Of a DNA stretch of 64,000 nt, positions 811-59,930 are shown piece by piece. Each line of letters starts with the position of its first letter. Position 1 is the first letter of the stretch. The position numbers were made by a program, and so were the translations under genes. Source of the DNA: Auanema rhodensis (lineage: Eukaryota; Animalia; Nematoda); contig OZ059894.1 of NCBI GenBank assembly GCA_964057225.1, forward strand, positions 11,842,001-11,906,000, read 5' to 3'. The notes below the pieces were generated by a model that did not search any database, had not been told where the DNA came from, and saw only the letters and a list, made by a program, of their open reading frames with translations.

Positions 811-1040
811 ACCAGTATAGTAATAGAACACATATTGAAGATTAATTCGATAAGAACAATTTATTGACGTAGAGAATGTTTGTTCCGAAAAACTACAATA
901 TTAAACTATAAAAGTAACAAAAGCGTAGAGGCAGCAAAGACATGAATAAACATAAATGTAAATACAGAATTACCAGGTAGTACATAAGTATGACAAAAAA
1001 TTATAAGAAAGCCATGAAAATAGAAGGTTTGTGAACAAAT
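811..1040 (-). mobile_element. Decayed relic of the 788-bp element family with a U2 nt 39-79 fragment (present in every standard unit)
   Basis: 811-820 matches the element's right end (10/10), 821-861 matches U2 nt 39-79 (36/41) and 862-905 matches the element's left end (38/44). Patchy similarity continues to about 1040. Confidence 0.8.
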
Positions 1041-1176: not shown

Positions 1177-1362
1177 AATGGGCCGTTCCCGCCAGCAGTG
1201 CAAGAGCGGGTCGACCCGTGAGGTGGAGCTAGCAAGCCAGCATCTACCTCAAGTCTCAAAAATCGGTTAACCTTATTGTGAACCAATGGAACACATATCG
1301 AAGGTTAATTCGATAAGAACGATTACTACACTTTGATCTTAGCCAAAAGGCCGAGAAGCGAT
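1177..1362 (-). ncRNA. U2: U2 spliceosomal snRNA (unit 1)
   Basis: Minus strand reads AUCGCUUCUCGGCCUUUUGGCUAAGAUCAAAGUGUAGUA. It has stem IIa UAUCGAA-UUAACC-UUCGAUA with downstream complement GGUUAA, Sm site AUUUUUG, stem III and stem IV with a UUGCAC loop. About 186 nt; 3' end approximate. Confidence 0.97.
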
Positions 1363-2479: not shown

Positions 2480-3659
2480 ACAGTAAAAAGTCCAATCAAG
2501 AGAGAAATTTTTTCAACACATAGTTGTTTTTTTTTTAAATATCATTGTTTTTCCTCATAACTCGGTTTAAACTCGTTCTAACCCGTTGAAATACGTCTAG
2601 AAAGTCTTTATAACATGCATATGTATGATAGAACTTCATATTTATTGTAATAGAAAATTTTATTTTCAGACGTCTTGGTTAACAATGATATGTTTTACCC
2701 CCTTATAATTTTTATCATAATGTTCCTTATACGGAACGCTCAATGAAACTTGCTTCCAGAAAAATTTCTTTCTATTTTTTCTTCATATGTACGTAGATAC
2801 TATAGAGAACTATGATAGAAAACTTTAACATTCACGAAATCATCATTTCTCATTACGCTACGGAGGTTTAAAAAGCTGTGTTTTACCTTATAATAGACCG
2901 GAAAACCCTTGTGTTAAAACTGGACCGTTTTTACACATATAAAAATGTCCCGTATTCGGGACCCTAATGTAACTTTTGATTCCCTATATTTTTTTTCATG
3001 AAATTTACAATCTACTGTAGAAAGAAGAATTATTTTTATAAAAACTGTAAATTTTTGAAAAATGAAAACAAAACGAAAACAAAAACAACTTTTTTTTGAA
3101 CATTTTCTCACACAAGGGTCCCCCCTTACCTACTTTTTTTCTCATTACTCGTTTCAACCTCATCCGATCACTCTGCAAACATGTTTAATCGTTCTAACTT
3201 GTTGAAATACGTCTTAAAAGTCTAAACAACATGCATATGCATAATAGAAACCACCCGAATAGGCCCCCACGCACTAAACGAGATATATACATTACCAGTA
3301 TAGTAATAGAACACATATTGAAGATTAATTCGATAAGAACAATTTATTGACGTAGAGAATGTTTGTTCCGAAAAACTACAATATTAAACTATAAAAGTAA
3401 CAAAAGCGTAGAGGCAGCAAAGACATGAATAAACATAAATGTAAATACAGAATTACCAGGTAGTACATAAGTATGACAAAAAATTATAAGAAAGCCATGA
3501 AAATAGAAGGTTTGTGAACAAATGAGAGGTACATCTTTGATCGTATAGTCATTTCTAAACCGTTCGTATGCTGCAGCATCGTCATAAGCGTCACTCAAGT
3601 TGAATTTCCATGTGTACTACACGATTTTCATTCTTATTGTTACATTCTTTCCCTGAGGG

Positions 3660-3845
3660 AATGGGCCGTTCCCGCCAGCAGTGCAAGAGCGGGTCGACCC
3701 GTGAGGTGGAGCTAGCAAGCCAGCATCTACCTCAAGTCTCAAAAATCGGTTAACCTTATTGTGAACCAATGGAACACATATCGAAGGTTAATTCGATAAG
3801 AACGATTACTACACTTTGATCTTAGCCAAAAGGCCGAGAAGCGAT
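3660..3845 (-). ncRNA. U2: U2 snRNA
   Basis: Same sequence as 1177-1362. Confidence 0.96.
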
Positions 3846-4406: not shown

Positions 4407-4647
4407 AATGTTATATTCTTCATTATCAGTTATATCACTCTAAATCTTGTTGTTAATAGTTAGGACCACAAAGAAAACAACAGGAACAGTAACAAATGAA
4501 ATGCCCAAACTTTACAGTGTTCGAGTTATTTACAGTATCTAAGACTACCTCTGTCGTGTTATTAGAGCAAACATTCGATTAACAACAACTTTTTTTTAGT
4601 TATCAAAGCTTTTTTATTTCTTCAAAAAATTTCAAATAAAATATAAA

Positions 4648-4765
4648 AGCTTACGACACCCGGGATTCCCAAGCCGTCTCGATCCAAGTACTAACCGGGC
4701 CCAACGTTGCTTGACTTGCCAGATCGGACGGGATGGCGTACTTTCAACGTGGTATGGTCGTAAGC
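4648..4765 (-). rRNA. 5S rRNA with a 1-nt deletion
   Basis: gtctcgatcc instead of gtctccgatcc at 4680; variant or sequencing error. Confidence 0.9.
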
Positions 4766-18649: not shown

Positions 18650-19045
18650 ATGGTTTATTGAATAACTAATGTTATGAAACAATAAATAACCAATAAAAAA
18701 GAGCCCAGAATCGGGGAGACGGTATTACCAGTACAACTTAAAACAGCAAGTGATTAAAAAGTACAAAATAAAACACATTACCAACAGAGGCTAAAACGAC
18801 TCAAGAGTCGGGGGAGTGGGTTAAAAAAAGTAATGAATAACAAAAAAAATGAATAATAAAGCAGACCAGTGAAAAGTAAATATCAAGTGCCGCTATGATC
18901 AAACAATTTGAGTGCCTACGGCAATGGTGTTAAAAATAAACAACAAAATACATGTACCAATGAAGGTCAGAAAGAGAGAAAGAAAAAAGACAAAAATAAG
19001 TAATACAAAAAGTAAAAAATATATTACAATCAAATCACAAACAAG

Positions 19046-19840
19046 TCAATGGATAATTTCTTCTTCATACTGCCTTACACCAGAAACATGTTCCACGTAG
19101 ATATTCCTGGCCCACTTGATGGTATCGGCGACGACGAGCTTCTCCATTAGCCGGTTGTAGTGGCTGCTGATCTTGAGTGATCGGAGGGCTTGTACGTTGA
19201 GCGGGTCCATAGTTCCAAGCATTCCTACGACATACGCTTCTACACTAGTCTTATAACCAAGACATTGGTATTGGCTGGCTATGTCAGCATATTTCCTCTC
19301 CTTTATCATACGCGCGGCTATCATGGCTTGTCGGCGGTTTTCATAGCTCACTGTAACATCAACGATACTACAGTGTTTTGCGTCATGATCGACCACTACT
19401 ATGTCAGGTCGGAGTGTACTATTAATGCCAGGAAGAGGCTGGTTAGTGTAAACTTCTCCGTTTTTAGGCTCTGGCAGGGCTTTGATAAGACGGTCCACGA
19501 TGTTGTTGTGGCGGAGTTGGATTGCTCTCGTGTGAAAGTGGCAGTGTCCAAGAACATGTGCAGCAGTTTCGTTGGGGTAACTACACCTGCGGCACTGTTT
19601 GTTTCCTTCTCCGTGTCTTCTACAGCCATTGAGCTGGAGAGTATTAAGTCGAGCCTTGTGGATGAATCGCCAATCAGCAAACCGTATGAAATCTCCCTTC
19701 GCCATAAAGTGATTGGACGCTTTGTTGAGCATTGTGACATCAAAGACTTTCCCTTGATCCGGTTTTTGAAGAAGGATCCGAAGGTCTTTCAGCCATAATG
19801 CACGTCGCAGGCTTCTGTGGCATAGTGAAGGTGTTAACAG
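19046..19840 (-). CDS. C-terminal fragment of the retrotransposon polyprotein: zinc knuckle + restriction-like endonuclease (truncated)
   Basis: KPDQGK...RFADWRFIHKARLN, CRRCSYPNETAAHVLGHC (CCHC), RHN, RPDIV, IVDVT, K-x2-KY. The frame is uninterrupted. The first ~30 aa of the 294-aa track ORF are read-through of the inverted segment and not native. Confidence 0.9.
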   Translation of the reverse strand: MLTPSLCHRSLRRALWLKDLRILLQKPDQGKVFDVTMLNKASNHFMAKGDFIRFADWRFIHKARLNTLQLNGCRRHGEGNKQCRRCSYPNETAAHVLGHCHFHTRAIQLRHNNIVDRLIKALPEPKNGEVYTNQPLPGINSTLRPDIVVVDHDAKHCSIVDVTVSYENRRQAMIAARMIKERKYADIASQYQCLGYKTSVEAYVVGMLGTMDPLNVQALRSLKISSHYNRLMEKLVVADTIKWARNIYVEHVSGVRQYEEEIIH

Positions 19841-19852
19841 TTGGTTCAGCAC

Positions 19853-20150
19853 TATCCTCCAAACGCCAGTGCTGAACCAATCTACCTGCCAACCAACTAC
19901 GGCGGACTTGGTCTCTCTCGACTCCAACACCTGTCAGACGTCTGTGAAGTCACTCATGCCTACCAACTTTTGAAGTCATCTGATCTTGTAGTAGCTGATA
20001 TTGCGCATCAAGACTCAATAAAAGTAGCATCAAAAAGGATTAAACGTCAAGCCAGTAACGATGAGACAGCTGCATATTACAACGGTTCCGTTGATGGCAT
20101 TTTCGACACCGAAACATCTGATGTTTCCTCCATCTGGACTAGAGTAAGAG
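19853..20150 (+). CDS. Inverted internal fragment of the same polyprotein (post-RT thumb/linker region)
   Basis: ASAEPIYLPTNYGGLGL...AYQLLKSSD...SIWTRVR. The YLP-x3-GGLG motif is typical of the end of non-LTR RT domains and normally lies just upstream of the KPDQGK region. Confidence 0.82.
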
Positions 20151-20662: not shown

Positions 20663-20804
20663 AATGTCATATTCTTCATTATCAGTTATATCACTCTAAA
20701 TCTTGTTGTTAATAGATACGACCACAAAGAAAACAACAGGAACAGTAACAATAACAAAAAAAATTTTTTTTTCACCTATGTGTCTAAAGGTTAGCCATGT
20801 ATCC

Positions 20805-20854
<50 letters not shown>

Positions 20855-22033
20855 ACAGTAAAAAGTCCAATCAAGAGAGAAATTTTTTCAACACATAGTT
20901 GTTTTTTTTTAAATATCATTGTTTTTCCTCATAACTCGGTTTAAACTCGTTCTAACCCGTTGAAATACGTCTAGAAAGTCTTTATAACATGCATATGTAT
21001 GATAGAACTTCATATTTATTGTAATAGAAAATTTTATTTTCAGACGTCTTGGTTAACAATGATATGTTTTACCCCCTTATAATTTTTATCATAATGTTCC
21101 TTATACGGAACGCTCAATGAAACTTGCTTCCAGAAAAATTTCTTTCTATTTTTTCTTCATATGTACGTAGATACTATAGAGAACTATGATAGAAAACTTT
21201 AACATTCACGAAATCATCATTTCTCATTACGCTACGGAGGTTTAAAAAGCTGTGTTTTACCTTATAATAGACCGGAAAACCCTTGTGTTAAAACTGGACC
21301 GTTTTTACACATATAAAAATGTCCCGTATTCGGGACCCTAATGTAACTTTTGATTCCCTATATTTTTTTTCATGAAATTTACAATCTACTGTAGAAAGAA
21401 GAATTATTTTTATAAAAACTGTAAATTTTTGAAAAATGAAAACAAAACGAAAACAAAAACAACTTTTTTTTGAACATTTTCTCACACAAGGGTCCCCCCT
21501 TACCTACTTTTTTTCTCATTACTCGTTTCAACCTCATCCGATCACTCTGCAAACATGTTTAATCGTTCTAACTTGTTGAAATACGTCTTAAAAGTCTAAA
21601 CAACATGCATATGCATAATAGAAACCACCCGAATAGGCTCCCACGCACTAAACGAGATATATACATTACCAGTATAGTAATAGAACACATATTGAAGATT
21701 AATTCGATAAAAACAATTTATTGACGTAGAGAATGTTTGTTCCGAAAAACTACAATATTAAACTATAAAAGTAACAAAAGCGTAGAGGCAGCAAAGACAT
21801 GAATAAACATAAATGTAAATACAGAATTACCAGGTAGTACATAAGTATGACAAAAAATTATAAGAAAGCCATGAAAATAGAAGGTTTGTGAACAAATGAG
21901 AGGTACATCTTTGATCGTATAGTCATTTCTAAACCGTTCGTATGCTGCAGCATCGTCATAAGCGTCACTCAAGTTGAATTTCCATGTGTACTACACGATT
22001 TTCATTCTTATTGTTACATTCTTTCCCTGAGGG

Positions 22034-23048
22034 AATGGGCCGTTCCCGCCAGCAGTGCAAGAGCGGGTCGACCCGTGAGGTGGAGCTAGCAAGCCAGCAT
22101 CTACCTCAAGTCTCAAAAATCGGTTAACCTTATTGTGAACCAATGGAACACATATCGAAGGTTAATTCGATAAGAACGATTTATTGAAGTAGATAATGTT
22201 TGTCCCGGAGGACTACAATATTAAAATAATTACTGAAGCCCGAAGGCAGCGAGAAATAGTAAGGATACTACCTGCACTGAGTGCGTCGTATCATAAAAAA
22301 AGAGATAGCTAATGGGCAAGTTGAAGAGCTTGAAATTAACAATGACGTCACTAGAAGTAAAGTTTTCTATCTGCAGCTGCGGGTAAAGAGGGTCAGCGTA
22401 AGCAGAATTCAATTCTACCAACAATTAGTGGGAACATTGAGAGAACAGATGAAGGAGGAAATTGTAACTTCAAGTAAAATAGATTATATCTTCAGCTGCG
22501 GGTAAAGAGAGTCAGCTTTGTACAGATTACTAGTTTACATAAGAAGTGGTAACATTTCAAAAAAGGAGCACAACATAAAAAACGAGACTACGGACTATGA
22601 GGTAAATGTTATCATTGTCTGGATCGATGATTCGGCATTTGATTGCAGCTGCGGATTGAGTGGATCAGCTTGCATGGCGTCCGCATTCGACATCAGGGAA
22701 AATGATGAGTTTCTTGAGGTCCGGCTCGGCGGGCTGTTATGTCCTATTCCCTGTTGATGGTGTTGTTGTCCTTGAGCTTGTTCTTCTTCCCAGAAAAAAA
22801 AAAACTGTGAAGCTGAAGAGTCCTATTAAACGTCTTTAAACGCAAGATTAATAAGAAGCTACTACAGCTAACACAGGACCGCCTCAAGGCCTGGTAGATC
22901 AACCAGTGTTGCTTCAATCACCAAGTATTGCGGCCTGGGCCCTTGGATCAATTCACAACACCAGTATAGCAATGGAACACATATCGAAGGTTAATTCGAT
23001 AAGAACGATTACTACACTTTGATCTTAGCCAAAAGGCCGAGAAGCGAT
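22034..23048 (-). pseudogene. U2: U2 gene interrupted by the 788-bp element
   Basis: U2 nt 1-79 at 23048-22970, then the insert, then U2 nt 39 to end at 22181-22034. Confidence 0.92.
22182..22969 (-). mobile_element. 788-bp non-autonomous U2-targeting element (SINE/SIDE-like) between 41-bp direct repeats
   Basis: Absent from standard units. Flanked by exact repeats caatggaacacatatcgaaggttaattcgataagaacgatt at 22141-22181 and 22970-23010. No long ORF. The minus-strand 3' end ...TTCAATAA(A) joins U2 at nt 39. Confidence 0.88.
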
Positions 23049-40833: not shown

Positions 40834-40942
40834 AGCTTACGACACCCGGGATTCTCCGATCCAAGTACTAACCGGGCCCAACGTTGCTTGACTTGCCAGA
40901 TCGGACGGGATGGCGTACTTTCAACGTGGTATGGTCGTAAGC
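40834..40942 (-). pseudogene. 5S rRNA copy with a 10-bp internal deletion
   Basis: gggattctccgat instead of gggattcccaagccgtctccgat at ~40854. Confidence 0.88.
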
Positions 40943-43973: not shown

Positions 43974-45152
43974 ACAGTAAAAAGTCCAATCAAGAGAGAA
44001 ATTTTTTCAACACATAGTTGTTTTTTTTTAAATATCATTGTTTTTCCTCATAACTCGGTTTAAACTCGTTCTAACCCGTTGAAATACGTCTAGAAAGTCT
44101 TTATAACATGCATATGTATGATAGAACTTCATATTTATTGTAATAGAAAATTTTATTTTCAGACGTCTTGGTTAACAATGATATGTTTTACCCCCTTATA
44201 ATTTTTATCATAATGTTCCTTATACGGAACGCTCAATGAAACTTGCTTCCAGAAAAATTTCTTTCTATTTTTTCTTCATATGTACGTAGATACTATAGAG
44301 AACTATGATAGAAAACTTTAACATTCACGAAATCATCATTTCTCATTACGCTACGGAGGTTTAAAAAGCTGTGTTTTACCTTATAATAGACCGGAAAACC
44401 CTTGTGTTAAAACTGGACCGTTTTTACACATATAAAAATGTCCCGTATTCGGGACCCTAATGTAACTTTTGATTCCCTATATTTTTTTTCATGAAATTTA
44501 CAATCTACTGTAGAAAGAAGAATTATTTTTATAAAAACTGTAAATTTTTGAAAAATGAAAACAAAACGAAAACAAAAACAACTTTTTTTTGAACATTTTC
44601 TCACACAAGGGTCCCCCCTTACCTACTTTTTTTCTCATTACTCGTTTCAACCTCATCCGATCACTCTGCAAACATGTTTAATCGTTCTAACTTGTTGAAA
44701 TACGTCTTAAAAGTCTAAACAACATGCATATGCATAATAGAAACCACCCGAATAGGCCCCCACGCACTAAACGAGATATATACATTACCAGTATAGTAAT
44801 AGAACACATATTGAAGATTAATTCGATAAGAACAATTTATTGACGTAGAGAATGTTTGTTCCGAAAAACTACAATATTAAACTATAAAAGTAACAAAAGC
44901 GTAGAGGCAGCAAAGACATGAATAAACATAAATGTAAATACAGAATTACCAGGTAGTACATAAGTATGACAAAAAATTATAAGAAAGCCATGAAAATAGA
45001 AGGTTTGTGAACAAATGAGAGGTACATCTTTGATCGTATAGTCATTTCTAAACCGTTCGTATGCTGCAGCATCGTCATAAGCGTCACTCAAGTTGAATTT
45101 CCATGTGTACTACACGATTTTCATTCTTATTGTTACATTCTTTCCCTGAGGG

Positions 45153-46167
45153 AATGGGCCGTTCCCGCCAGCAGTGCAAGAGCGGGTCGACCCGTGAGGT
45201 GGAGCTAGCAAGCCAGCATCTACCTCAAGTCTCAAAAATCGGTTAACCTTATTGTGAACCAATGGAACACATATCGAAGGTTAATTCGATAAGAACGATT
45301 TATTGAAGTAGATAATGTTTGTCCCGGAGGACTACAATATTAAAATAATTACTGAAGCCCGAAGGCAGCGAGAAATAGTAAGGATACTACCTGCACTGAG
45401 TGCGTCGTATCATAAAAAAAGAGATAGCTAATGGGCAAGTTGAAGAGCTTGAAATTAACAATGACGTCACTAGAAGTAAAGTTTTCTATCTGCAGCTGCG
45501 GGTAAAGAGGGTCAGCGTAAGCAGAATTCAATTCTACCAACAATTAGTGGGAACATTGAGAGAACAGATGAAGGAGGAAATTGTAACTTCAAGTAAAATA
45601 GATTATATCTTCAGCTGCGGGTAAAGAGAGTCAGCTTTGTACAGATTACTAGTTTACATAAGAAGTGGTAACATTTCAAAAAAGGAGCACAACATAAAAA
45701 ACGAGACTACGGACTATGAGGTAAATGTTATCATTGTCTGGATCGATGATTCGGCATTTGATTGCAGCTGCGGATTGAGTGGATCAGCTTGCATGGCGTC
45801 CGCATTCGACATCAGGGAAAATGATGAGTTTCTTGAGGTCCGGCTCGGCGGGCTGTTATGTCCTATTCCCTGTTGATGGTGTTGTTGTCCTTGAGCTTGT
45901 TCTTCTTCCCAGAAAAAAAAAAACTGTGAAGCTGAAGAGTCCTATTAAACGTCTTTAAACGCAAGATTAATAAGAAGCTACTACAGCTAACACAGGACCG
46001 CCTCAAGGCCTGGTAGATCAACCAGTGTTGCTTCAATCACCAAGTATTGCGGCCTGGGCCCTTGGATCAATTCACAACACCAGTATAGCAATGGAACACA
46101 TATCGAAGGTTAATTCGATAAGAACGATTACTACACTTTGATCTTAGCCAAAAGGCCGAGAAGCGAT
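45153..46167 (-). pseudogene. U2: U2 gene interrupted by the 788-bp element
   Basis: Same structure as 22034-23048. Confidence 0.92.
45301..46088 (-). mobile_element. 788-bp U2-targeting element, copy 2
   Basis: Same sequence; direct repeats at 45260-45300 and 46089-46129. Confidence 0.88.
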
Positions 46168-51083: not shown

Positions 51084-51479
51084 ATGGTTTATTGAATAAC
51101 TAATGTTATGAAACAATAAATAACCAATAAAAAAGAGCCCAGAATCGGGGAGACGGTATTACCAGTACAACTTAAAACAGCAAGTGATTAAAAAGTACAA
51201 AATAAAACACATTACCAACAGAGGCTAAAACGACTCAAGAGTCGGGGGAGTGGGTTAAAAAAAGTAATGAATAACAAAAAAAATGAATAATAAAGCAGAC
51301 CAGTGAAAAGTAAATATCAAGTGCCGCTATGATCAAACAATTTGAGTGCCTACGGCAATGGTGTTAAAAATAAACAACAAAATACATGTACCAATGAAGG
51401 TCAGAAAGAGAGAAAGAAAAAAGACAAAAATAAGTAATACAAAAAGTAAAAAATATATTACAATCAAATCACAAACAAG

Positions 51480-52274
51480 TCAATGGATAATTTCTTCTTC
51501 ATACTGCCTTACACCAGAAACATGTTCCACGTAGATATTCCTGGCCCACTTGATGGTATCGGCGACGACGAGCTTCTCCATTAGCCGGTTGTAGTGGCTG
51601 CTGATCTTGAGTGATCGGAGGGCTTGTACGTTGAGCGGGTCCATAGTTCCAAGCATTCCTACGACATACGCTTCTACACTAGTCTTATAACCAAGACATT
51701 GGTATTGGCTGGCTATGTCAGCATATTTCCTCTCCTTTATCATACGCGCGGCTATCATGGCTTGTCGGCGGTTTTCATAGCTCACTGTAACATCAACGAT
51801 ACTACAGTGTTTTGCGTCATGATCGACCACTACTATGTCAGGTCGGAGTGTACTATTAATGCCAGGAAGAGGCTGGTTAGTGTAAACTTCTCCGTTTTTA
51901 GGCTCTGGCAGGGCTTTGATAAGACGGTCCACGATGTTGTTGTGGCGGAGTTGGATTGCTCTCGTGTGAAAGTGGCAGTGTCCAAGAACATGTGCAGCAG
52001 TTTCGTTGGGGTAACTACACCTGCGGCACTGTTTGTTTCCTTCTCCGTGTCTTCTACAGCCATTGAGCTGGAGAGTATTAAGTCGAGCCTTGTGGATGAA
52101 TCGCCAATCAGCAAACCGTATGAAATCTCCCTTCGCCATAAAGTGATTGGACGCTTTGTTGAGCATTGTGACATCAAAGACTTTCCCTTGATCCGGTTTT
52201 TGAAGAAGGATCCGAAGGTCTTTCAGCCATAATGCACGTCGCAGGCTTCTGTGGCATAGTGAAGGTGTTAACAG
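51480..52274 (-). CDS. C-terminal CCHC + RLE fragment, second copy
   Basis: Identical translation to 19046-19840. Confidence 0.9.
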   Translation of the reverse strand: MLTPSLCHRSLRRALWLKDLRILLQKPDQGKVFDVTMLNKASNHFMAKGDFIRFADWRFIHKARLNTLQLNGCRRHGEGNKQCRRCSYPNETAAHVLGHCHFHTRAIQLRHNNIVDRLIKALPEPKNGEVYTNQPLPGINSTLRPDIVVVDHDAKHCSIVDVTVSYENRRQAMIAARMIKERKYADIASQYQCLGYKTSVEAYVVGMLGTMDPLNVQALRSLKISSHYNRLMEKLVVADTIKWARNIYVEHVSGVRQYEEEIIH

Positions 52275-52286
52275 TTGGTTCAGCAC

Positions 52287-52584
52287 TATCCTCCAAACGC
52301 CAGTGCTGAACCAATCTACCTGCCAACCAACTACGGCGGACTTGGTCTCTCTCGACTCCAACACCTGTCAGACGTCTGTGAAGTCACTCATGCCTACCAA
52401 CTTTTGAAGTCATCTGATCTTGTAGTAGCTGATATTGCGCATCAAGACTCAATAAAAGTAGCATCAAAAAGGATTAAACGTCAAGCCAGTAACGATGAGA
52501 CAGCTGCATATTACAACGGTTCCGTTGATGGCATTTTCGACACCGAAACATCTGATGTTTCCTCCATCTGGACTAGAGTAAGAG
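52287..52584 (+). CDS. Inverted thumb/linker fragment, second copy
   Basis: Identical translation to 19853-20150. Confidence 0.82.
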
Positions 52585-52617
52585 TATTTCTTCAAGATAT
52601 TTCAAATAAAATATAAA

Positions 52618-52736
52618 AGCTTACGACACCCGGGATTCCCAAGCCGTCTCCGATCCAAGTACTAACCGGGCCCAACGTTGCTTGACTTGCCAGATCGGAC
52701 GGGATGGCGTACTTTCAACGTGGTATGGTCGTAAGC
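52618..52736 (-). rRNA. 5S rRNA
   Basis: Same as 1805-1923. Confidence 0.97.
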
Positions 52737-52977
52737 AATGTTATATTCTTCATTATCAGTTATATCACTCTAAATCTTGTTGTTAATAGTTAGGACCACA
52801 AAGAAAACAACAGGAACAGTAACAAATGAAATGCCCAAACTTTACAGTGTTCGAGTTATTTACAGTATCTAAGACTACCTCTGTCGTGTTATTAGAGCAA
52901 ACATTCGATTAACAACAACTTTTTTTTAGTTATCAAAGCTTTTTTATTTCTTCAAAAAATTTCAAATAAAATATAAA

Positions 52978-53096
52978 AGCTTACGACACCCGGGATTCCC
53001 AAGCCGTCTCCGATCCAAGTACTAACCGGGCCCAACGTTGCTTGACTTGCCAGATCGGACGGGATGGCGTACTTTCAACGTGGTATGGTCGTAAGC
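52978..53096 (-). rRNA. 5S rRNA
   Basis: Same as 1805-1923. Confidence 0.97.
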
Positions 53097-53238
53097 AATG
53101 TCATATTCTTCATTATCAGTTATATCACTCTAAATCTTGTTGTTAATAGATACGACCACAAAGAAAACAACAGGAACAGTAACAATAACAAAAAAAATTT
53201 TTTTTTCACCTATGTGTCTAAAGGTTAGCCATGTATCC

Positions 53239-53288
<50 letters not shown>

Positions 53289-53416
53289 ACAGTAAAAAGT
53301 CCAATCAAGAGAGAAATTTTTTCAACACATAGTTGTTTTTTTTTAAATATCATTGTTTTTCCTCATAACTCGGTTTAAACTCGTTCTAACCCGTTGAAAT
53401 ACGTCTAGAAAGTCTT

Positions 53417-53958
53417 TATAACATGCATATGTATGATAGAACTTCATATTTATTGTAATAGAAAATTTTATTTTCAGACGTCTTGGTTAACAATGATATG
53501 TTTTACCCCCTTATAATTTTTATCATAATGTTCCTTATACGGAACGCTCAATGAAACTTGCTTCCAGAAAAATTTCTTTCTATTTTTTCTTCATATGTAC
53601 GTAGATACTATAGAGAACTATGATAGAAAACTTTAACATTCACGAAATCATCATTTCTCATTACGCTACGGAGGTTTAAAAAGCTGTGTTTTACCTTATA
53701 CCTCCGTAGCGTAATGAGAAATGATGATTTCGTGAATGTTAAAGTTTTCTATCATAGTTCTCTATAGTATCTACGTACATATGAAGAAAAAATAGAAAGA
53801 AATTTTTCTGGAAGCAAGTTTCATTGAGCGTTCCGTATAAGGAACATTATGATAAAAATTATAAGGGGGTAAAACATATCATTGTTAACCAAGACGTCTG
53901 AAAATAAAATTTTCTATTACAATAAATATGAAGTTCTATCATACATATGCATGTTATA
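53417..53958. repeat. 259-bp inverted repeat (arms 53417-53675 and 53700-53958, 24-nt spacer)
   Basis: 53701 onward (cctccgtagcgtaatgag...) is the reverse complement of the preceding spacer. The sequence then resumes at tagagcacatatc, just before 5S-A. Confidence 0.95.
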
Positions 53959-54707: not shown

Positions 54708-55886
54708 ACAGTAAAAAGTCCAATCAAGAGAGAAATTTTTTCAACACATAGTTGTTTTTTTTTAAATATCATTGTTTTTCCTCATAACTCGGTTTAAACT
54801 CGTTCTAACCCGTTGAAATACGTCTAGAAAGTCTTTATAACATGCATATGTATGATAGAACTTCATATTTATTGTAATAGAAAATTTTATTTTCAGACGT
54901 CTTGGTTAACAATGATATGTTTTACCCCCTTATAATTTTTATCATAATGTTCCTTATACGGAACGCTCAATGAAACTTGCTTCCAGAAAAATTTCTTTCT
55001 ATTTTTTCTTCATATGTACGTAGATACTATAGAGAACTATGATAGAAAACTTTAACATTCACGAAATCATCATTTCTCATTACGCTACGGAGGTTTAAAA
55101 AGCTGTGTTTTACCTTATAATAGACCGGAAAACCCTTGTGTTAAAACTGGACCGTTTTTACACATATAAAAATGTCCCGTATTCGGGACCCTAATGTAAC
55201 TTTTGATTCCCTATATTTTTTTTCATGAAATTTACAATCTACTGTAGAAAGAAGAATTATTTTTATAAAAACTGTAAATTTTTGAAAAATGAAAACAAAA
55301 CGAAAACAAAAACAACTTTTTTTTGAACATTTTCTCACACAAGGGTCCCCCCTTACCTACTTTTTTTCTCATTACTCGTTTCAACCTCATCCGATCACTC
55401 TGCAAACATGTTTAATCGTTCTAACTTGTTGAAATACGTCTTAAAAGTCTAAACAACATGCATATGCATAATAGAAACCACCCGAATAGGCTCCCACGCA
55501 CTAAACGAGATATATACATTACCAGTATAGTAATAGAACACATATTGAAGATTAATTCGATAAAAACAATTTATTGACGTAGAGAATGTTTGTTCCGAAA
55601 AACTACAATATTAAACTATAAAAGTAACAAAAGCGTAGAGGCAGCAAAGACATGAATAAACATAAATGTAAATACAGAATTACCAGGTAGTACATAAGTA
55701 TGACAAAAAATTATAAGAAAGCCATGAAAATAGAAGGTTTGTGAACAAATGAGAGGTACATCTTTGATCGTATAGTCATTTCTAAACCGTTCGTATGCTG
55801 CAGCATCGTCATAAGCGTCACTCAAGTTGAATTTCCATGTGTACTACACGATTTTCATTCTTATTGTTACATTCTTTCCCTGAGGG

Positions 55887-56901
55887 AATGGGCCGTTCCC
55901 GCCAGCAGTGCAAGAGCGGGTCGACCCGTGAGGTGGAGCTAGCAAGCCAGCATCTACCTCAAGTCTCAAAAATCGGTTAACCTTATTGTGAACCAATGGA
56001 ACACATATCGAAGGTTAATTCGATAAGAACGATTTATTGAAGTAGATAATGTTTGTCCCGGAGGACTACAATATTAAAATAATTACTGAAGCCCGAAGGC
56101 AGCGAGAAATAGTAAGGATACTACCTGCACTGAGTGCGTCGTATCATAAAAAAAGAGATAGCTAATGGGCAAGTTGAAGAGCTTGAAATTAACAATGACG
56201 TCACTAGAAGTAAAGTTTTCTATCTGCAGCTGCGGGTAAAGAGGGTCAGCGTAAGCAGAATTCAATTCTACCAACAATTAGTGGGAACATTGAGAGAACA
56301 GATGAAGGAGGAAATTGTAACTTCAAGTAAAATAGATTATATCTTCAGCTGCGGGTAAAGAGAGTCAGCTTTGTACAGATTACTAGTTTACATAAGAAGT
56401 GGTAACATTTCAAAAAAGGAGCACAACATAAAAAACGAGACTACGGACTATGAGGTAAATGTTATCATTGTCTGGATCGATGATTCGGCATTTGATTGCA
56501 GCTGCGGATTGAGTGGATCAGCTTGCATGGCGTCCGCATTCGACATCAGGGAAAATGATGAGTTTCTTGAGGTCCGGCTCGGCGGGCTGTTATGTCCTAT
56601 TCCCTGTTGATGGTGTTGTTGTCCTTGAGCTTGTTCTTCTTCCCAGAAAAAAAAAAACTGTGAAGCTGAAGAGTCCTATTAAACGTCTTTAAACGCAAGA
56701 TTAATAAGAAGCTACTACAGCTAACACAGGACCGCCTCAAGGCCTGGTAGATCAACCAGTGTTGCTTCAATCACCAAGTATTGCGGCCTGGGCCCTTGGA
56801 TCAATTCACAACACCAGTATAGCAATGGAACACATATCGAAGGTTAATTCGATAAGAACGATTACTACACTTTGATCTTAGCCAAAAGGCCGAGAAGCGA
56901 T
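55887..56901 (-). pseudogene. U2: U2 gene interrupted by the 788-bp element
   Basis: Same structure as 22034-23048. Confidence 0.92.
56035..56822 (-). mobile_element. 788-bp U2-targeting element, copy 3
   Basis: Same sequence; direct repeats at 55994-56034 and 56823-56863. Confidence 0.88.
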
Positions 56902-59821: not shown

Positions 59822-59930
59822 AGCTTACGACACCCGGGATTCTCCGATCCAAGTACTAACCGGGCCCAACGTTGCTTGACTTGCCAGATCGGACGGGATG
59901 GCGTACTTTCAACGTGGTATGGTCGTAAGC
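59822..59930 (-). pseudogene. 5S rRNA copy with the same 10-bp internal deletion
   Basis: gggattctccgat at ~59842. Confidence 0.88.

What the first reader, a model, noticed from the sequence alone, without database searches (positions are those of the whole stretch)
22141..23048. Non-coding U2-targeting element that rebuilds its own target site: candidate non-autonomous partner of a Utopia-like retrotransposon
Seen: a 788-bp insert with no long ORF, in three copies (22182-22969, 45301-46088, 56035-56822). On the minus strand the order is U2 nt 1-79, element, U2 nt 39 to end, so 41 bp of U2 is exactly duplicated. Its 3' junction (U2 nt 38/39) coincides with the 3' junction of the RLE retrotransposon in the same array. 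Known: RLE non-LTR elements prime reverse transcription at a fixed nick; Utopia elements target U2 genes; R2 has short non-autonomous dependants. Inference: the element is transcribed from the intact U2 promoter as a U2(1-79)-element chimera and mobilised in trans by the RLE protein. The 41-bp repeat is either an unusually long target-site duplication or a U2 segment carried at the element's own 5' end. Either way an intact target is regenerated upstream of each insertion, allowing serial insertion. I do not recognise this element family.
Basis: partly seen in the sequence, partly recalled or inferred. Interest (0 to 1): 0.88.

Follow-up and report, generated by a model that had tools for sequence, protein, structure and literature searches.

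The report
Non-coding rider in U2 snRNA genes
A family of short non-coding mobile elements sits inside U2 snRNA genes at the exact nucleotide used by a protein-coding Utopia-type retrotransposon. Each copy keeps a working-looking U2 front end ahead of it, so it most likely borrows both the U2 promoter and the Utopia enzyme to copy itself.

Summary
Three identical 788-bp inserts lie in the window, each ordered U2 nt 1-79 | insert | U2 nt 39-190, with an exact 41-bp duplicate.

The whole genome holds at least 44 copies. All lie in one array of about 1.3 Mb of U2/5S units. They form four subfamilies:
- A: 788 bp
- B: 742 bp
- C: 783 bp
- D: 864 bp

The subfamilies share a conserved 5' end of about 108 nt and a 3' end of about 120 nt, but their interiors are scrambled. 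All have the same U2 junctions.

The resident autonomous element is 3727 bp with an intact 1092-aa ORF, and at least 40 copies are present. It sits U2 1-96 | element | U2 38-end.

Mixed head-to-tail chains occur, which shows serial insertion. One Utopia copy carries U2 from nt 2-4 joined to ectopic spacer. This fits an RNA that starts at U2 +1.

I conclude that this is a non-autonomous, U2-specific rider of Utopia. Its "target duplication" is a U2 leader carried in the transcript and re-templated at integration, as proposed for R2 in earwig.

RNA evidence could not be obtained. Trans-mobilisation is inferred, not shown.

The scan had already noted this element elsewhere in the same genome (s1-378755, s1-391272).

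The parts
22970..23048 (-). U2 snRNA nt 1-79 upstream of the insert. It is contiguous with the normal U2 upstream region and is the proposed transcribed leader. It still contains the nt 38/39 target.
   Evidence: Exact match to unit positions 1-79, with canonical upstream flank.
22182..22969 (-). Short non-coding element, subfamily A, 788 bp, copy 1
22862..22969 (-). Conserved 5' domain (element nt 1-108), 83-97% identical between subfamilies A-D. A long irregular hairpin is predicted.
22182..22301 (-). Conserved 3' domain (element nt 669-788), 66-93% identical between subfamilies. It has three conserved hairpins and a single-stranded tail. The last 19 nt match the Utopia 3' end at 16 of 19 positions.
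22141..22181 (-). Second, exact copy of U2 nt 39-79 immediately 3' of the insert
22030..22181 (-). Promoter-less U2 nt 39-190 downstream of the insert
45301..46088 (-). Subfamily A copy 2, flanked by U2 1-79 at 46089-46167 and U2 39-190 at 45149-45300
56035..56822 (-). Subfamily A copy 3, flanked by U2 1-79 at 56823-56901 and U2 39-190 at 55883-56034
18650..20150 (-). Rearranged 5'-truncated Utopia-type copy. It joins inverted element nt 2455-2152 to element nt 2531-3727, including the CCHC and RLE coding part. Its 3' junction is at U2 nt 37/38-38/39. The upstream 446 bp of target is missing and there is no U2 duplication.
51084..52584 (-). Second copy of the same rearranged Utopia fragment. 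It has the same upstream breakpoint, so it arose by array duplication and not by a separate insertion.
21668..21793 (-). Fossil in the unit spacer: an element 3' tail of about 75 nt, then a decayed U2 39-79 piece (about 90% identical), then an element 5' head of about 10 nt. It is present in every standard unit, for example at 811-936.

Best explanation
The 788-bp insert is one subfamily (A) of a family of non-coding, non-autonomous retroelements (A-D). They insert only into U2 snRNA genes, at the bottom-strand nick between U2 nt 38 and 39 that the resident Utopia-type RT/RLE protein makes. They are most likely copied by that protein in trans.

Proposed cycle; all steps are inferred unless marked otherwise:
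1. Transcription starts at U2 +1 from the external U2 (Pol II snRNA-type) promoter of the interrupted gene. This gives an RNA of U2 1-79 plus the element, possibly running on into U2 39-190.
2. The Utopia protein nicks another U2 gene at 38/39 and primes reverse transcription at the element's 3' end. It is helped by the conserved 3' domain and the shared terminal motif.
3. The cDNA ends in the complement of the U2 leader. It anneals to the U2 sequence of the target's top strand, and second-strand synthesis starts at the end of that homology: nt 79 for A-D and nt 96 for Utopia.
4. The product is U2 1-79 | element | U2 39-end. This structure is shown directly by the sequence.

The 41-bp 'duplication' is thus a leader carried by the RNA and refreshed from the target at each insertion. 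It is not the product of a fixed 41-bp staggered cut. Because promoter, +1 and target site are rebuilt upstream, the new copy can be transcribed again and can be hit again. This explains the observed chains.
For: Family and selection on its ends:
- The four subfamilies have conserved ends and scrambled interiors. The 5' domain is 83-97% identical, the interior 32-57% and the 3' domain 66-93%.
- All have identical junctions, U2 1-79 | X | U2 39-end.
- The pattern of conserved ends points to selection for mobility. The decayed fossil in the spacer shows what neutral decay in place looks like.

Specificity:
- All 44 candidate matches in a 181-Mb genome lie in the U2/5S array.

Same site as Utopia:
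- The published Utopia 3' flank starts at U2 nt 39 (PMC4640811).
- The resident element has at least 40 copies with an intact 1092-aa ORF, an RVT_1 domain and CCHC plus RLE motifs.

Serial insertion:
- Uto | 38-79 | D | 39-79 | A | 39-end (L046/L027).
- Uto | 38-79 | A (L022).
- Uto | 38-79 | C | 39-96 | Uto (L048).

Leader model:
- The 5' boundary is specific to each element (79 versus 96) although the nick is shared.
- L049 has spacer position 1215 joined through a TC microhomology to U2 nt 2-4...96 | Utopia. This is as expected if a cDNA reached the RNA 5' end at U2 +1 and was joined without homology.
- Three 5'-truncated Utopia copies lack any duplication and have upstream deletions.
- A 44%-identical relative from another organism has the same 3' junction but a 5' flank that runs only to nt 53-54. 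It also forms tandem chains.

Precedent:
- Earwig R2 copies all carry 22 bp of downstream 28S at their 5' end. This is explained by co-transcribed target sequence and cDNA annealing (PMC3774820).

Not Pol III:
- T5-T12 runs occur on the sense strand of all subfamilies, and there is no tRNA, 7SL or 5S head.

Shared 3' end:
- The 3' terminal motif matches Utopia at 16 of 19 positions. Only 8 of 5000 shuffles and 0 of 692 background windows score as well.
Against: - There is no RNA evidence.
- Much of the A copy number comes from array amplification and not from insertion. Thirteen consecutive A-bearing units lie at 11.94-11.98 Mb.
- Units are too homogeneous to prove that the three window copies arose independently.
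- No 5'-truncated short copies were seen.
- Similarity to Utopia is limited to about 19 terminal nt. A profile of A-D does not hit Utopia.
- The leader-start junction is a single case. Another breakpoint, 74 nt upstream of U2, shows that rearrangements do occur near there.
- The carried 41 nt are perfect in all subfamilies. This needs refreshing from the target, or gene conversion, and pure inheritance would not give it.
- No covariation supports the predicted RNA folds.
Confidence: 0.68

Rival explanations
1. The element is a true non-autonomous rider, but the 41-bp repeat is a genuine target-site duplication made afresh at each insertion. The top strand would be cut 41 bp downstream of the bottom-strand nick, and the RNA would start at element nt 1.
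For: The duplicate is a perfect copy of the local U2 in every subfamily and every copy. That is what a fresh duplication gives. Long duplications are known among RLE elements, for example 20 bp for reptile Utopia. The chains are equally compatible with this reading.
Against: The same nick gives 59 bp for Utopia and 41 bp for A-D. Each value is constant across diverged subfamilies, so one enzyme would need two fixed second cuts. Truncated Utopia copies have deletions in place of the duplication. The L049 junction beginning at U2 nt 2-4 is not explained.
Confidence: 0.17
2. The rider depends on a different autonomous partner, such as a second and possibly extinct Utopia lineage from which A-D derive by internal deletion, as R2 SIDEs derive from R2. 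It would not depend on the abundant resident element.
For: A-D share no 5' or interior similarity with the resident Utopia, and only about 19 nt at the 3' end. Their 5' boundary also differs, at 79 versus 96.
Against: No other element in the genome shares the A-D termini; all 44 candidates are A-D themselves. A copies are 99.7-100% identical, which suggests recent activity while only the resident Utopia is seen with intact ORFs. The protein search scored only the top 42 of 205 candidates, so a rarer lineage is not excluded.
Confidence: 0.1
3. The element is not mobile now. A single old insertion or piece of filler DNA diverged in place and was spread through the array by unequal crossover and gene conversion.
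For: Runs of consecutive A-bearing units show amplification by crossover. Both truncated Utopia fragments in the window share one breakpoint. A fossil junction sits in every unit.
Against: Decay in place would not keep the two ends at 83-97% and 66-93% while the interior falls to 32-57%. It would not keep U2 flanks perfect while the fossil's flank decayed. It would not place A, C and D in different chain contexts next to Utopia.
Confidence: 0.05

Closest known systems
R2 SIDEs, the short internally deleted non-autonomous elements of R2 in Drosophila 28S genes (PMC3414825)
   Same: Both are non-coding. Both use the same site-specific insertion point as an RLE retrotransposon in a tandem multicopy RNA gene. 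Both depend on host-gene co-transcription and have conserved 5' and 3' ends.
   Different: A-D are not internal deletions of the resident autonomous element; they share only about 19 nt of 3' tail. No HDV-like ribozyme was detected. The host promoter is a Pol II snRNA promoter, not Pol I. They carry 79 nt of host gene as a leader.
R2 5' junctions propagated through co-transcribed target sequence, for example the 22-bp downstream 28S duplication on all earwig R2 copies (PMC3774820)
   Same: [quoted passage not shown] It is best explained by target sequence present on the RNA and by annealing of the cDNA to the target.
   Different: Here the duplications are 41 and 59 bp and are perfect, whereas the earwig copy carries substitutions. 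The upstream RNA end appears to be the host gene's own +1 and not a ribozyme cut. The same feature is seen on a non-autonomous element.
Utopia, the U2-targeting RLE non-LTR retrotransposons (Kojima and Jurka 2015, PMC4640811)
   Same: The autonomous partner has the Utopia target (3' flank starting at U2 nt 38/39), N-terminal zinc fingers, RT, CCHC and RLE. It has no Pfam Myb hit and occurs in tandem in U2 arrays.
   Different: That paper reports no duplication in arthropods, 20 bp in reptiles, and no non-autonomous partner. Here the duplication is 59 bp and there is a four-subfamily rider.
SINEU, crocodilian SINEs with U1- or U2-derived heads (PMC4494074)
   Same: Both are non-coding retroelements whose 5' part is U2 sequence. 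Both have oligo-T runs that exclude Pol III and have no internal promoter.
   Different: SINEU is dispersed, has poly(A) tails, is attributed to Tx1-type LINEs, and its promoter is unknown. A-D stay inside U2 genes, so each copy lands behind a real U2 promoter, and they have no poly(A).

Membership tests
Utopia (autonomous partner) | RT plus C-terminal CCHC and PD-(D/E)xK restriction-like endonuclease, with N-terminal zinc fingers | tested here: met
   1092-aa ORF. RVT_1 at E 5e-28 and a weak zf-RVT hit. CCHC and RLE motifs are read in the translation.
Utopia (autonomous partner) | 3' flank is U2 snRNA starting at nt 39 | tested here: met
   All copies examined abut U2 at nt 38 or 39, with one ambiguous T.
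Utopia (autonomous partner) | Lacks the R2-type Myb domain (criterion used in PMC13188248) | tested here: met
   No Myb family among Pfam hits at E <= 0.01.
Utopia (autonomous partner) | RT groups with reference Utopia families in a phylogeny | not tested
   No reference Utopia sequences were available as tool output. Indirect support: homologues include wasps, a tortoise and nematodes, and a 44%-identical relative is itself flanked by U2 from nt 39.
SIDE-type non-autonomous partner of an RLE element | No coding capacity, and the same insertion nucleotide as the autonomous element | tested here: met
SIDE-type non-autonomous partner of an RLE element | Derived from the autonomous element by internal deletion, sharing its 5' and 3' ends | tested here: not met
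   No significant 5' or interior similarity. Only a 16-of-19 nt terminal motif is shared.
SIDE-type non-autonomous partner of an RLE element | 5' self-cleaving (HDV-like) ribozyme | tested here: inconclusive
   No ribozyme family in Rfam at E <= 10. No dedicated HDV-like descriptor search or cleavage assay was run.
Classical SINE | Head derived from tRNA, 7SL or 5S, with an internal Pol III promoter | tested here: not met
   No such Rfam hit. Sense-strand T5-T12 runs occur in all subfamilies.
SINEU | snRNA-derived head carried to dispersed loci, with a poly(A) tail | tested here: not met
   All copies are in U2 genes. There is no A-run at the 3' end. The U2 1-79 'head' cannot be told apart from the target gene itself.
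Site-specific DNA transposon (e.g. Dada) | Terminal inverted repeats and a short fixed target duplication | tested here: not met
   Terminal inverted-repeat score is at shuffle level in A-D. The duplication is 41 bp.

The most novel reading that the evidence does not exclude
A-D are a new class of promoter-borrowing non-autonomous retroelement. They have no internal promoter, so they stay inside U2 genes and carry a U2 leader from +1 to nt 79. Every new copy is therefore installed behind a live Pol II snRNA promoter with its target site rebuilt. Their conserved 108-nt 5' domain, which is unrelated to Utopia, would be a new functional RNA module, for example one that recruits the Utopia protein or directs homology-guided 5' joining.
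Probability: 0.4. Interest if true: 0.75.

Novelty: new variant of a known kind. Interest (0 to 1): 0.62.

Why it matters
Non-autonomous partners are known for R2 but, as far as my searches reached, not for Utopia (one search found no paper with the three terms; one search found none in the Utopia paper).

This system is a natural experiment on two open points of RLE retrotransposition. The first is how the 5' junction and second strand are made. Here two elements use one nick but keep different, lineage-specific target leaders. The second is how a promoter-less short element secures transcription. Here it never leaves a gene with an external snRNA promoter.

The system also shows a very large U2/5S array, with roughly 600 or more U2 5' regions, that tolerates dozens of intact retrotransposons and their riders.

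The system is compact and testable. It consists of a 0.8-kb RNA, a defined 41-nt leader and an intact 1092-aa protein.

Tried and rejected
- **Reads.** No RNA or polymorphism evidence exists.
- **Full census.** Counts rest on the top 40 scored hits per search.
- **Ribozyme or known RNA.** Nothing in Rfam at E <= 10 apart from U2. By hand I found no convincing HDV-like nested pseudoknot.
- **RNA structure.** Consensus folds of the 5' domain, the 3' domain and the whole element show conserved hairpins but essentially no compensatory changes with four sequences. The single-sequence z-score is -0.3.
- **Similarity of A-D to Utopia.** Not significant by blastn, local alignment or profile search, beyond the terminal motif.
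- **Other tests.** Inverted repeats, conserved ORFs and remnants of the Utopia protein were all negative.
- **Unit haplotypes.** The window is too homogeneous to separate insertion from crossover.
- **Metagenome scans.** Two invariant motifs of the element gave no hits.
- **Spliceosomal intron in U2.** Rejected, because no GT-AG boundaries fit either way of placing the duplicate.

Full report
**What the window is.** Rfam finds 18 full U2 snRNA genes, several split U2 matches and about 45 5S rRNA genes, all on the minus strand. Self-alignment shows a tandem unit of about 2481 bp with one U2 gene and two 5S genes. The window is G000:C1:11842001-11906000 of a 181-Mb assembly. The closest named relatives of the retrotransposon protein are from nematodes such as Plectus and Diploscapter, and from arthropods.

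**The observation.** Three units are longer by 829 bp. Read in U2 sense, each is U2 nt 1-79, then a 788-bp insert, then U2 nt 39-190. The three inserts are identical and the 41-nt duplicate is exact. The insert has no open frame longer than 83 aa, no frame conserved between subfamilies, no similarity to the retrotransposon protein and no terminal inverted repeats.

**The neighbour.** The 1501-bp inserts at 18650-20150 and 51084-52584 encode the CCHC and restriction-like endonuclease end of a non-LTR element.
- They are rearranged 5'-truncated copies, with a 302-bp inverted piece followed by the last 1197 bp.
- Both share one upstream breakpoint at unit position 2072. They are therefore one event duplicated by the array.
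- Full-length copies elsewhere in the array are 3727 bp with an intact 1092-aa ORF. The ORF has two N-terminal zinc fingers, RVT_1, CCHC and RLE, and no Myb hit.
- At least 40 copies have an intact ORF at 98-100% identity, and all lie in the array.
- Their flanks are U2 1-96 | element | U2 38-end.
- The published Utopia families leave U2 starting at nt 39 on their 3' side.
- A 44%-identical relative from another organism ends against the same U2 nucleotides. Its 5' flank runs to about nt 53-54, and it also occurs head-to-tail separated by that U2 piece.

I therefore treat the autonomous element as Utopia-type. A formal RT phylogeny was not done.

**The short element is a family.**
- A genome search with the 788-bp insert found 44 candidates, all in C1 between 10.9 and 12.2 Mb.
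- They fall into four subfamilies. A is 788 bp with at least 29 copies at 99.7-100% identity. B is 742 bp with 3 copies. C is 783 bp with 3 copies. D is 864 bp with at least 9 copies.
- Between subfamilies the first 108 nt are 83-97% identical and the last 120 nt are 66-93% identical. The interior is only 32-57% identical.
- Every subfamily has the same junctions, U2 1-79 upstream and U2 39 downstream.
- Conserved ends around a free-running interior are the signature of a non-autonomous mobile element under selection for mobility.
- A contrast is built into every array unit. The spacer carries a fossil made of an element tail, a U2 39-79 piece and an element head. The U2 piece of the fossil has decayed to about 90% identity. 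I took this lead from note s1-391318 and verified it.

**Serial insertion is observed, not only predicted.**
- L046/L027 read U2 1-96 | Utopia | U2 38-79 | D | U2 39-79 | A | U2 39-end.
- L022 reads Utopia | U2 38-79 | A.
- L048 reads Utopia | U2 38-79 | C | U2 39-96 | Utopia.
- L029 holds a chimera of A nt 1 to about 745 joined, at a short T/A-rich microhomology, to the last 179 nt of Utopia. This is the insert described in note s1-391272. It could come from template switching or from a deletion between neighbours.
- Much of the A copy number is array amplification. Thirteen consecutive A-bearing units lie at 11.94-11.98 Mb, with spacings of 3309 and 2947 bp.

**Carried leader or fresh duplication.** Four observations favour a U2 leader carried on the RNA.
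1. Utopia and A-D share the nick but have different 5' boundaries, nt 96 and nt 79. Each boundary is constant across diverged subfamilies. The relative in L051 uses about nt 53-54. Published families show 0 or 20 bp.
2. In L049 a Utopia copy is preceded by U2 running back to nt 2-4, and this is fused through a TC microhomology to spacer position 1215 in place of the normal upstream sequence. That is what a cDNA reaching an RNA 5' end at U2 +1 and joined without homology would leave. It is a single case. Another breakpoint 74 nt upstream of U2 shows that rearrangements do occur nearby.
3. The three 5'-truncated Utopia copies I could read lack the duplication and carry upstream deletions of 446 bp or more.
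4. There is a worked precedent. R2 RNAs that retain upstream 28S sequence give uniform 5' junctions by cDNA-target annealing, and junction oddities are then propagated. These include 22 bp of downstream 28S on every earwig R2.

The carried 41 nt are perfect in all subfamilies. I therefore propose that the target's own top strand pairs with the leader complement on the cDNA and primes at the end of the homology. This refreshes the leader at every insertion and also explains chains that begin at nt 38 or 39.

**Transcription.** The element has sense-strand T5-T12 runs and no tRNA, 7SL or 5S head, which argues against Pol III. Each canonical copy sits 79 nt downstream of an intact U2 start with the normal upstream region. 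Use of the U2 promoter is inferred.

**Link to the enzyme.** Apart from the shared site, A-D and Utopia share only a near-terminal 3' motif, with 16 of 19 nt matching. Only 8 of 5000 shuffles and 0 of 692 background windows score as well. In both elements the motif is preceded by a hairpin. There is no wider similarity. A-D are therefore not simple deletion derivatives of the resident Utopia. This leaves room for a different, unseen partner.

**Comparison and novelty.**
- The element works like an R2 SIDE: non-coding, same site, co-transcribed with the host gene. It fails two SIDE features, namely derivation from the partner and a detectable 5' ribozyme.
- It resembles SINEU in having a U2 head and no Pol III promoter. 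Unlike SINEU it never leaves U2 genes.
- The Utopia paper and my text searches report no non-autonomous Utopia partner.
- I class it as a new variant of a known kind.
- Earlier agents of this scan reached the same general reading on neighbouring DNA. New here are the four subfamilies, the chains, the element-specific leader boundaries, the +1 junction and the R2 precedent.

**Limits.**
- There are no related genomes to search and no metagenome hits.
- Covariation is uninformative.

Noticed in passing
window 811-936, and the same position in every unit (e.g. 21668-21793): Each standard unit spacer holds a decayed junction made of an element tail, a U2 39-79 piece and an element head. The rider family therefore predates the homogenisation of the present array.
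   Followed up: yes
window 52585-53958: A complex rearrangement. A unit is truncated at position 2119, followed by an inverted spacer piece (unit 975-1237), then a partial unit (954-2072) leading into the truncated Utopia copy.
   Followed up: partly
L040/L041 (G000:C1:11224428-11230479): Two Utopia copies lie tail-to-tail around inverted U2 3' parts. Several copies are on the opposite strand. The array therefore contains inversions and palindromes.
   Followed up: partly
window 40834-40942, 59822-59930, 4648-4765: 5S gene variants with a deletion of about 10 nt (109 nt, 92 bits) or 1 nt. They lie among otherwise identical 119-nt 5S genes.
   Followed up: no
all U2 copies, U2 nt 39-56 (e.g. 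window 1307-1324): Immediately 3' of the branch-point recognition sequence, this U2 departs from the Rfam consensus. The Rfam alignment shows non-matching positions there. The Utopia relative in L051 is flanked by the same variant.
   Followed up: partly
L043 reverse strand, Utopia nt 29-42, upstream of the ATG at nt 53: A GTAAGT motif and a TTTAG motif sit in the 52-nt stretch between the U2 leader and the start codon. If the host is a nematode, the second could be a trans-splice acceptor that gives a translatable capped mRNA. This is pure speculation.
   Followed up: no
L046 reverse strand 4542-4552 (D subfamily 5' end): D carries 11 extra 5' nt. Eight of them match nt 7-14 of the Utopia 5' end and begin with the first five bases of U2 nt 39-43. 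They may be a remnant of an older junction.
   Followed up: no
unit spacer, (AT)n tract (e.g. window 20791-20861): Most length variation between units (2459-2487 bp) comes from one AT microsatellite and a 10-bp indel.
   Followed up: yes
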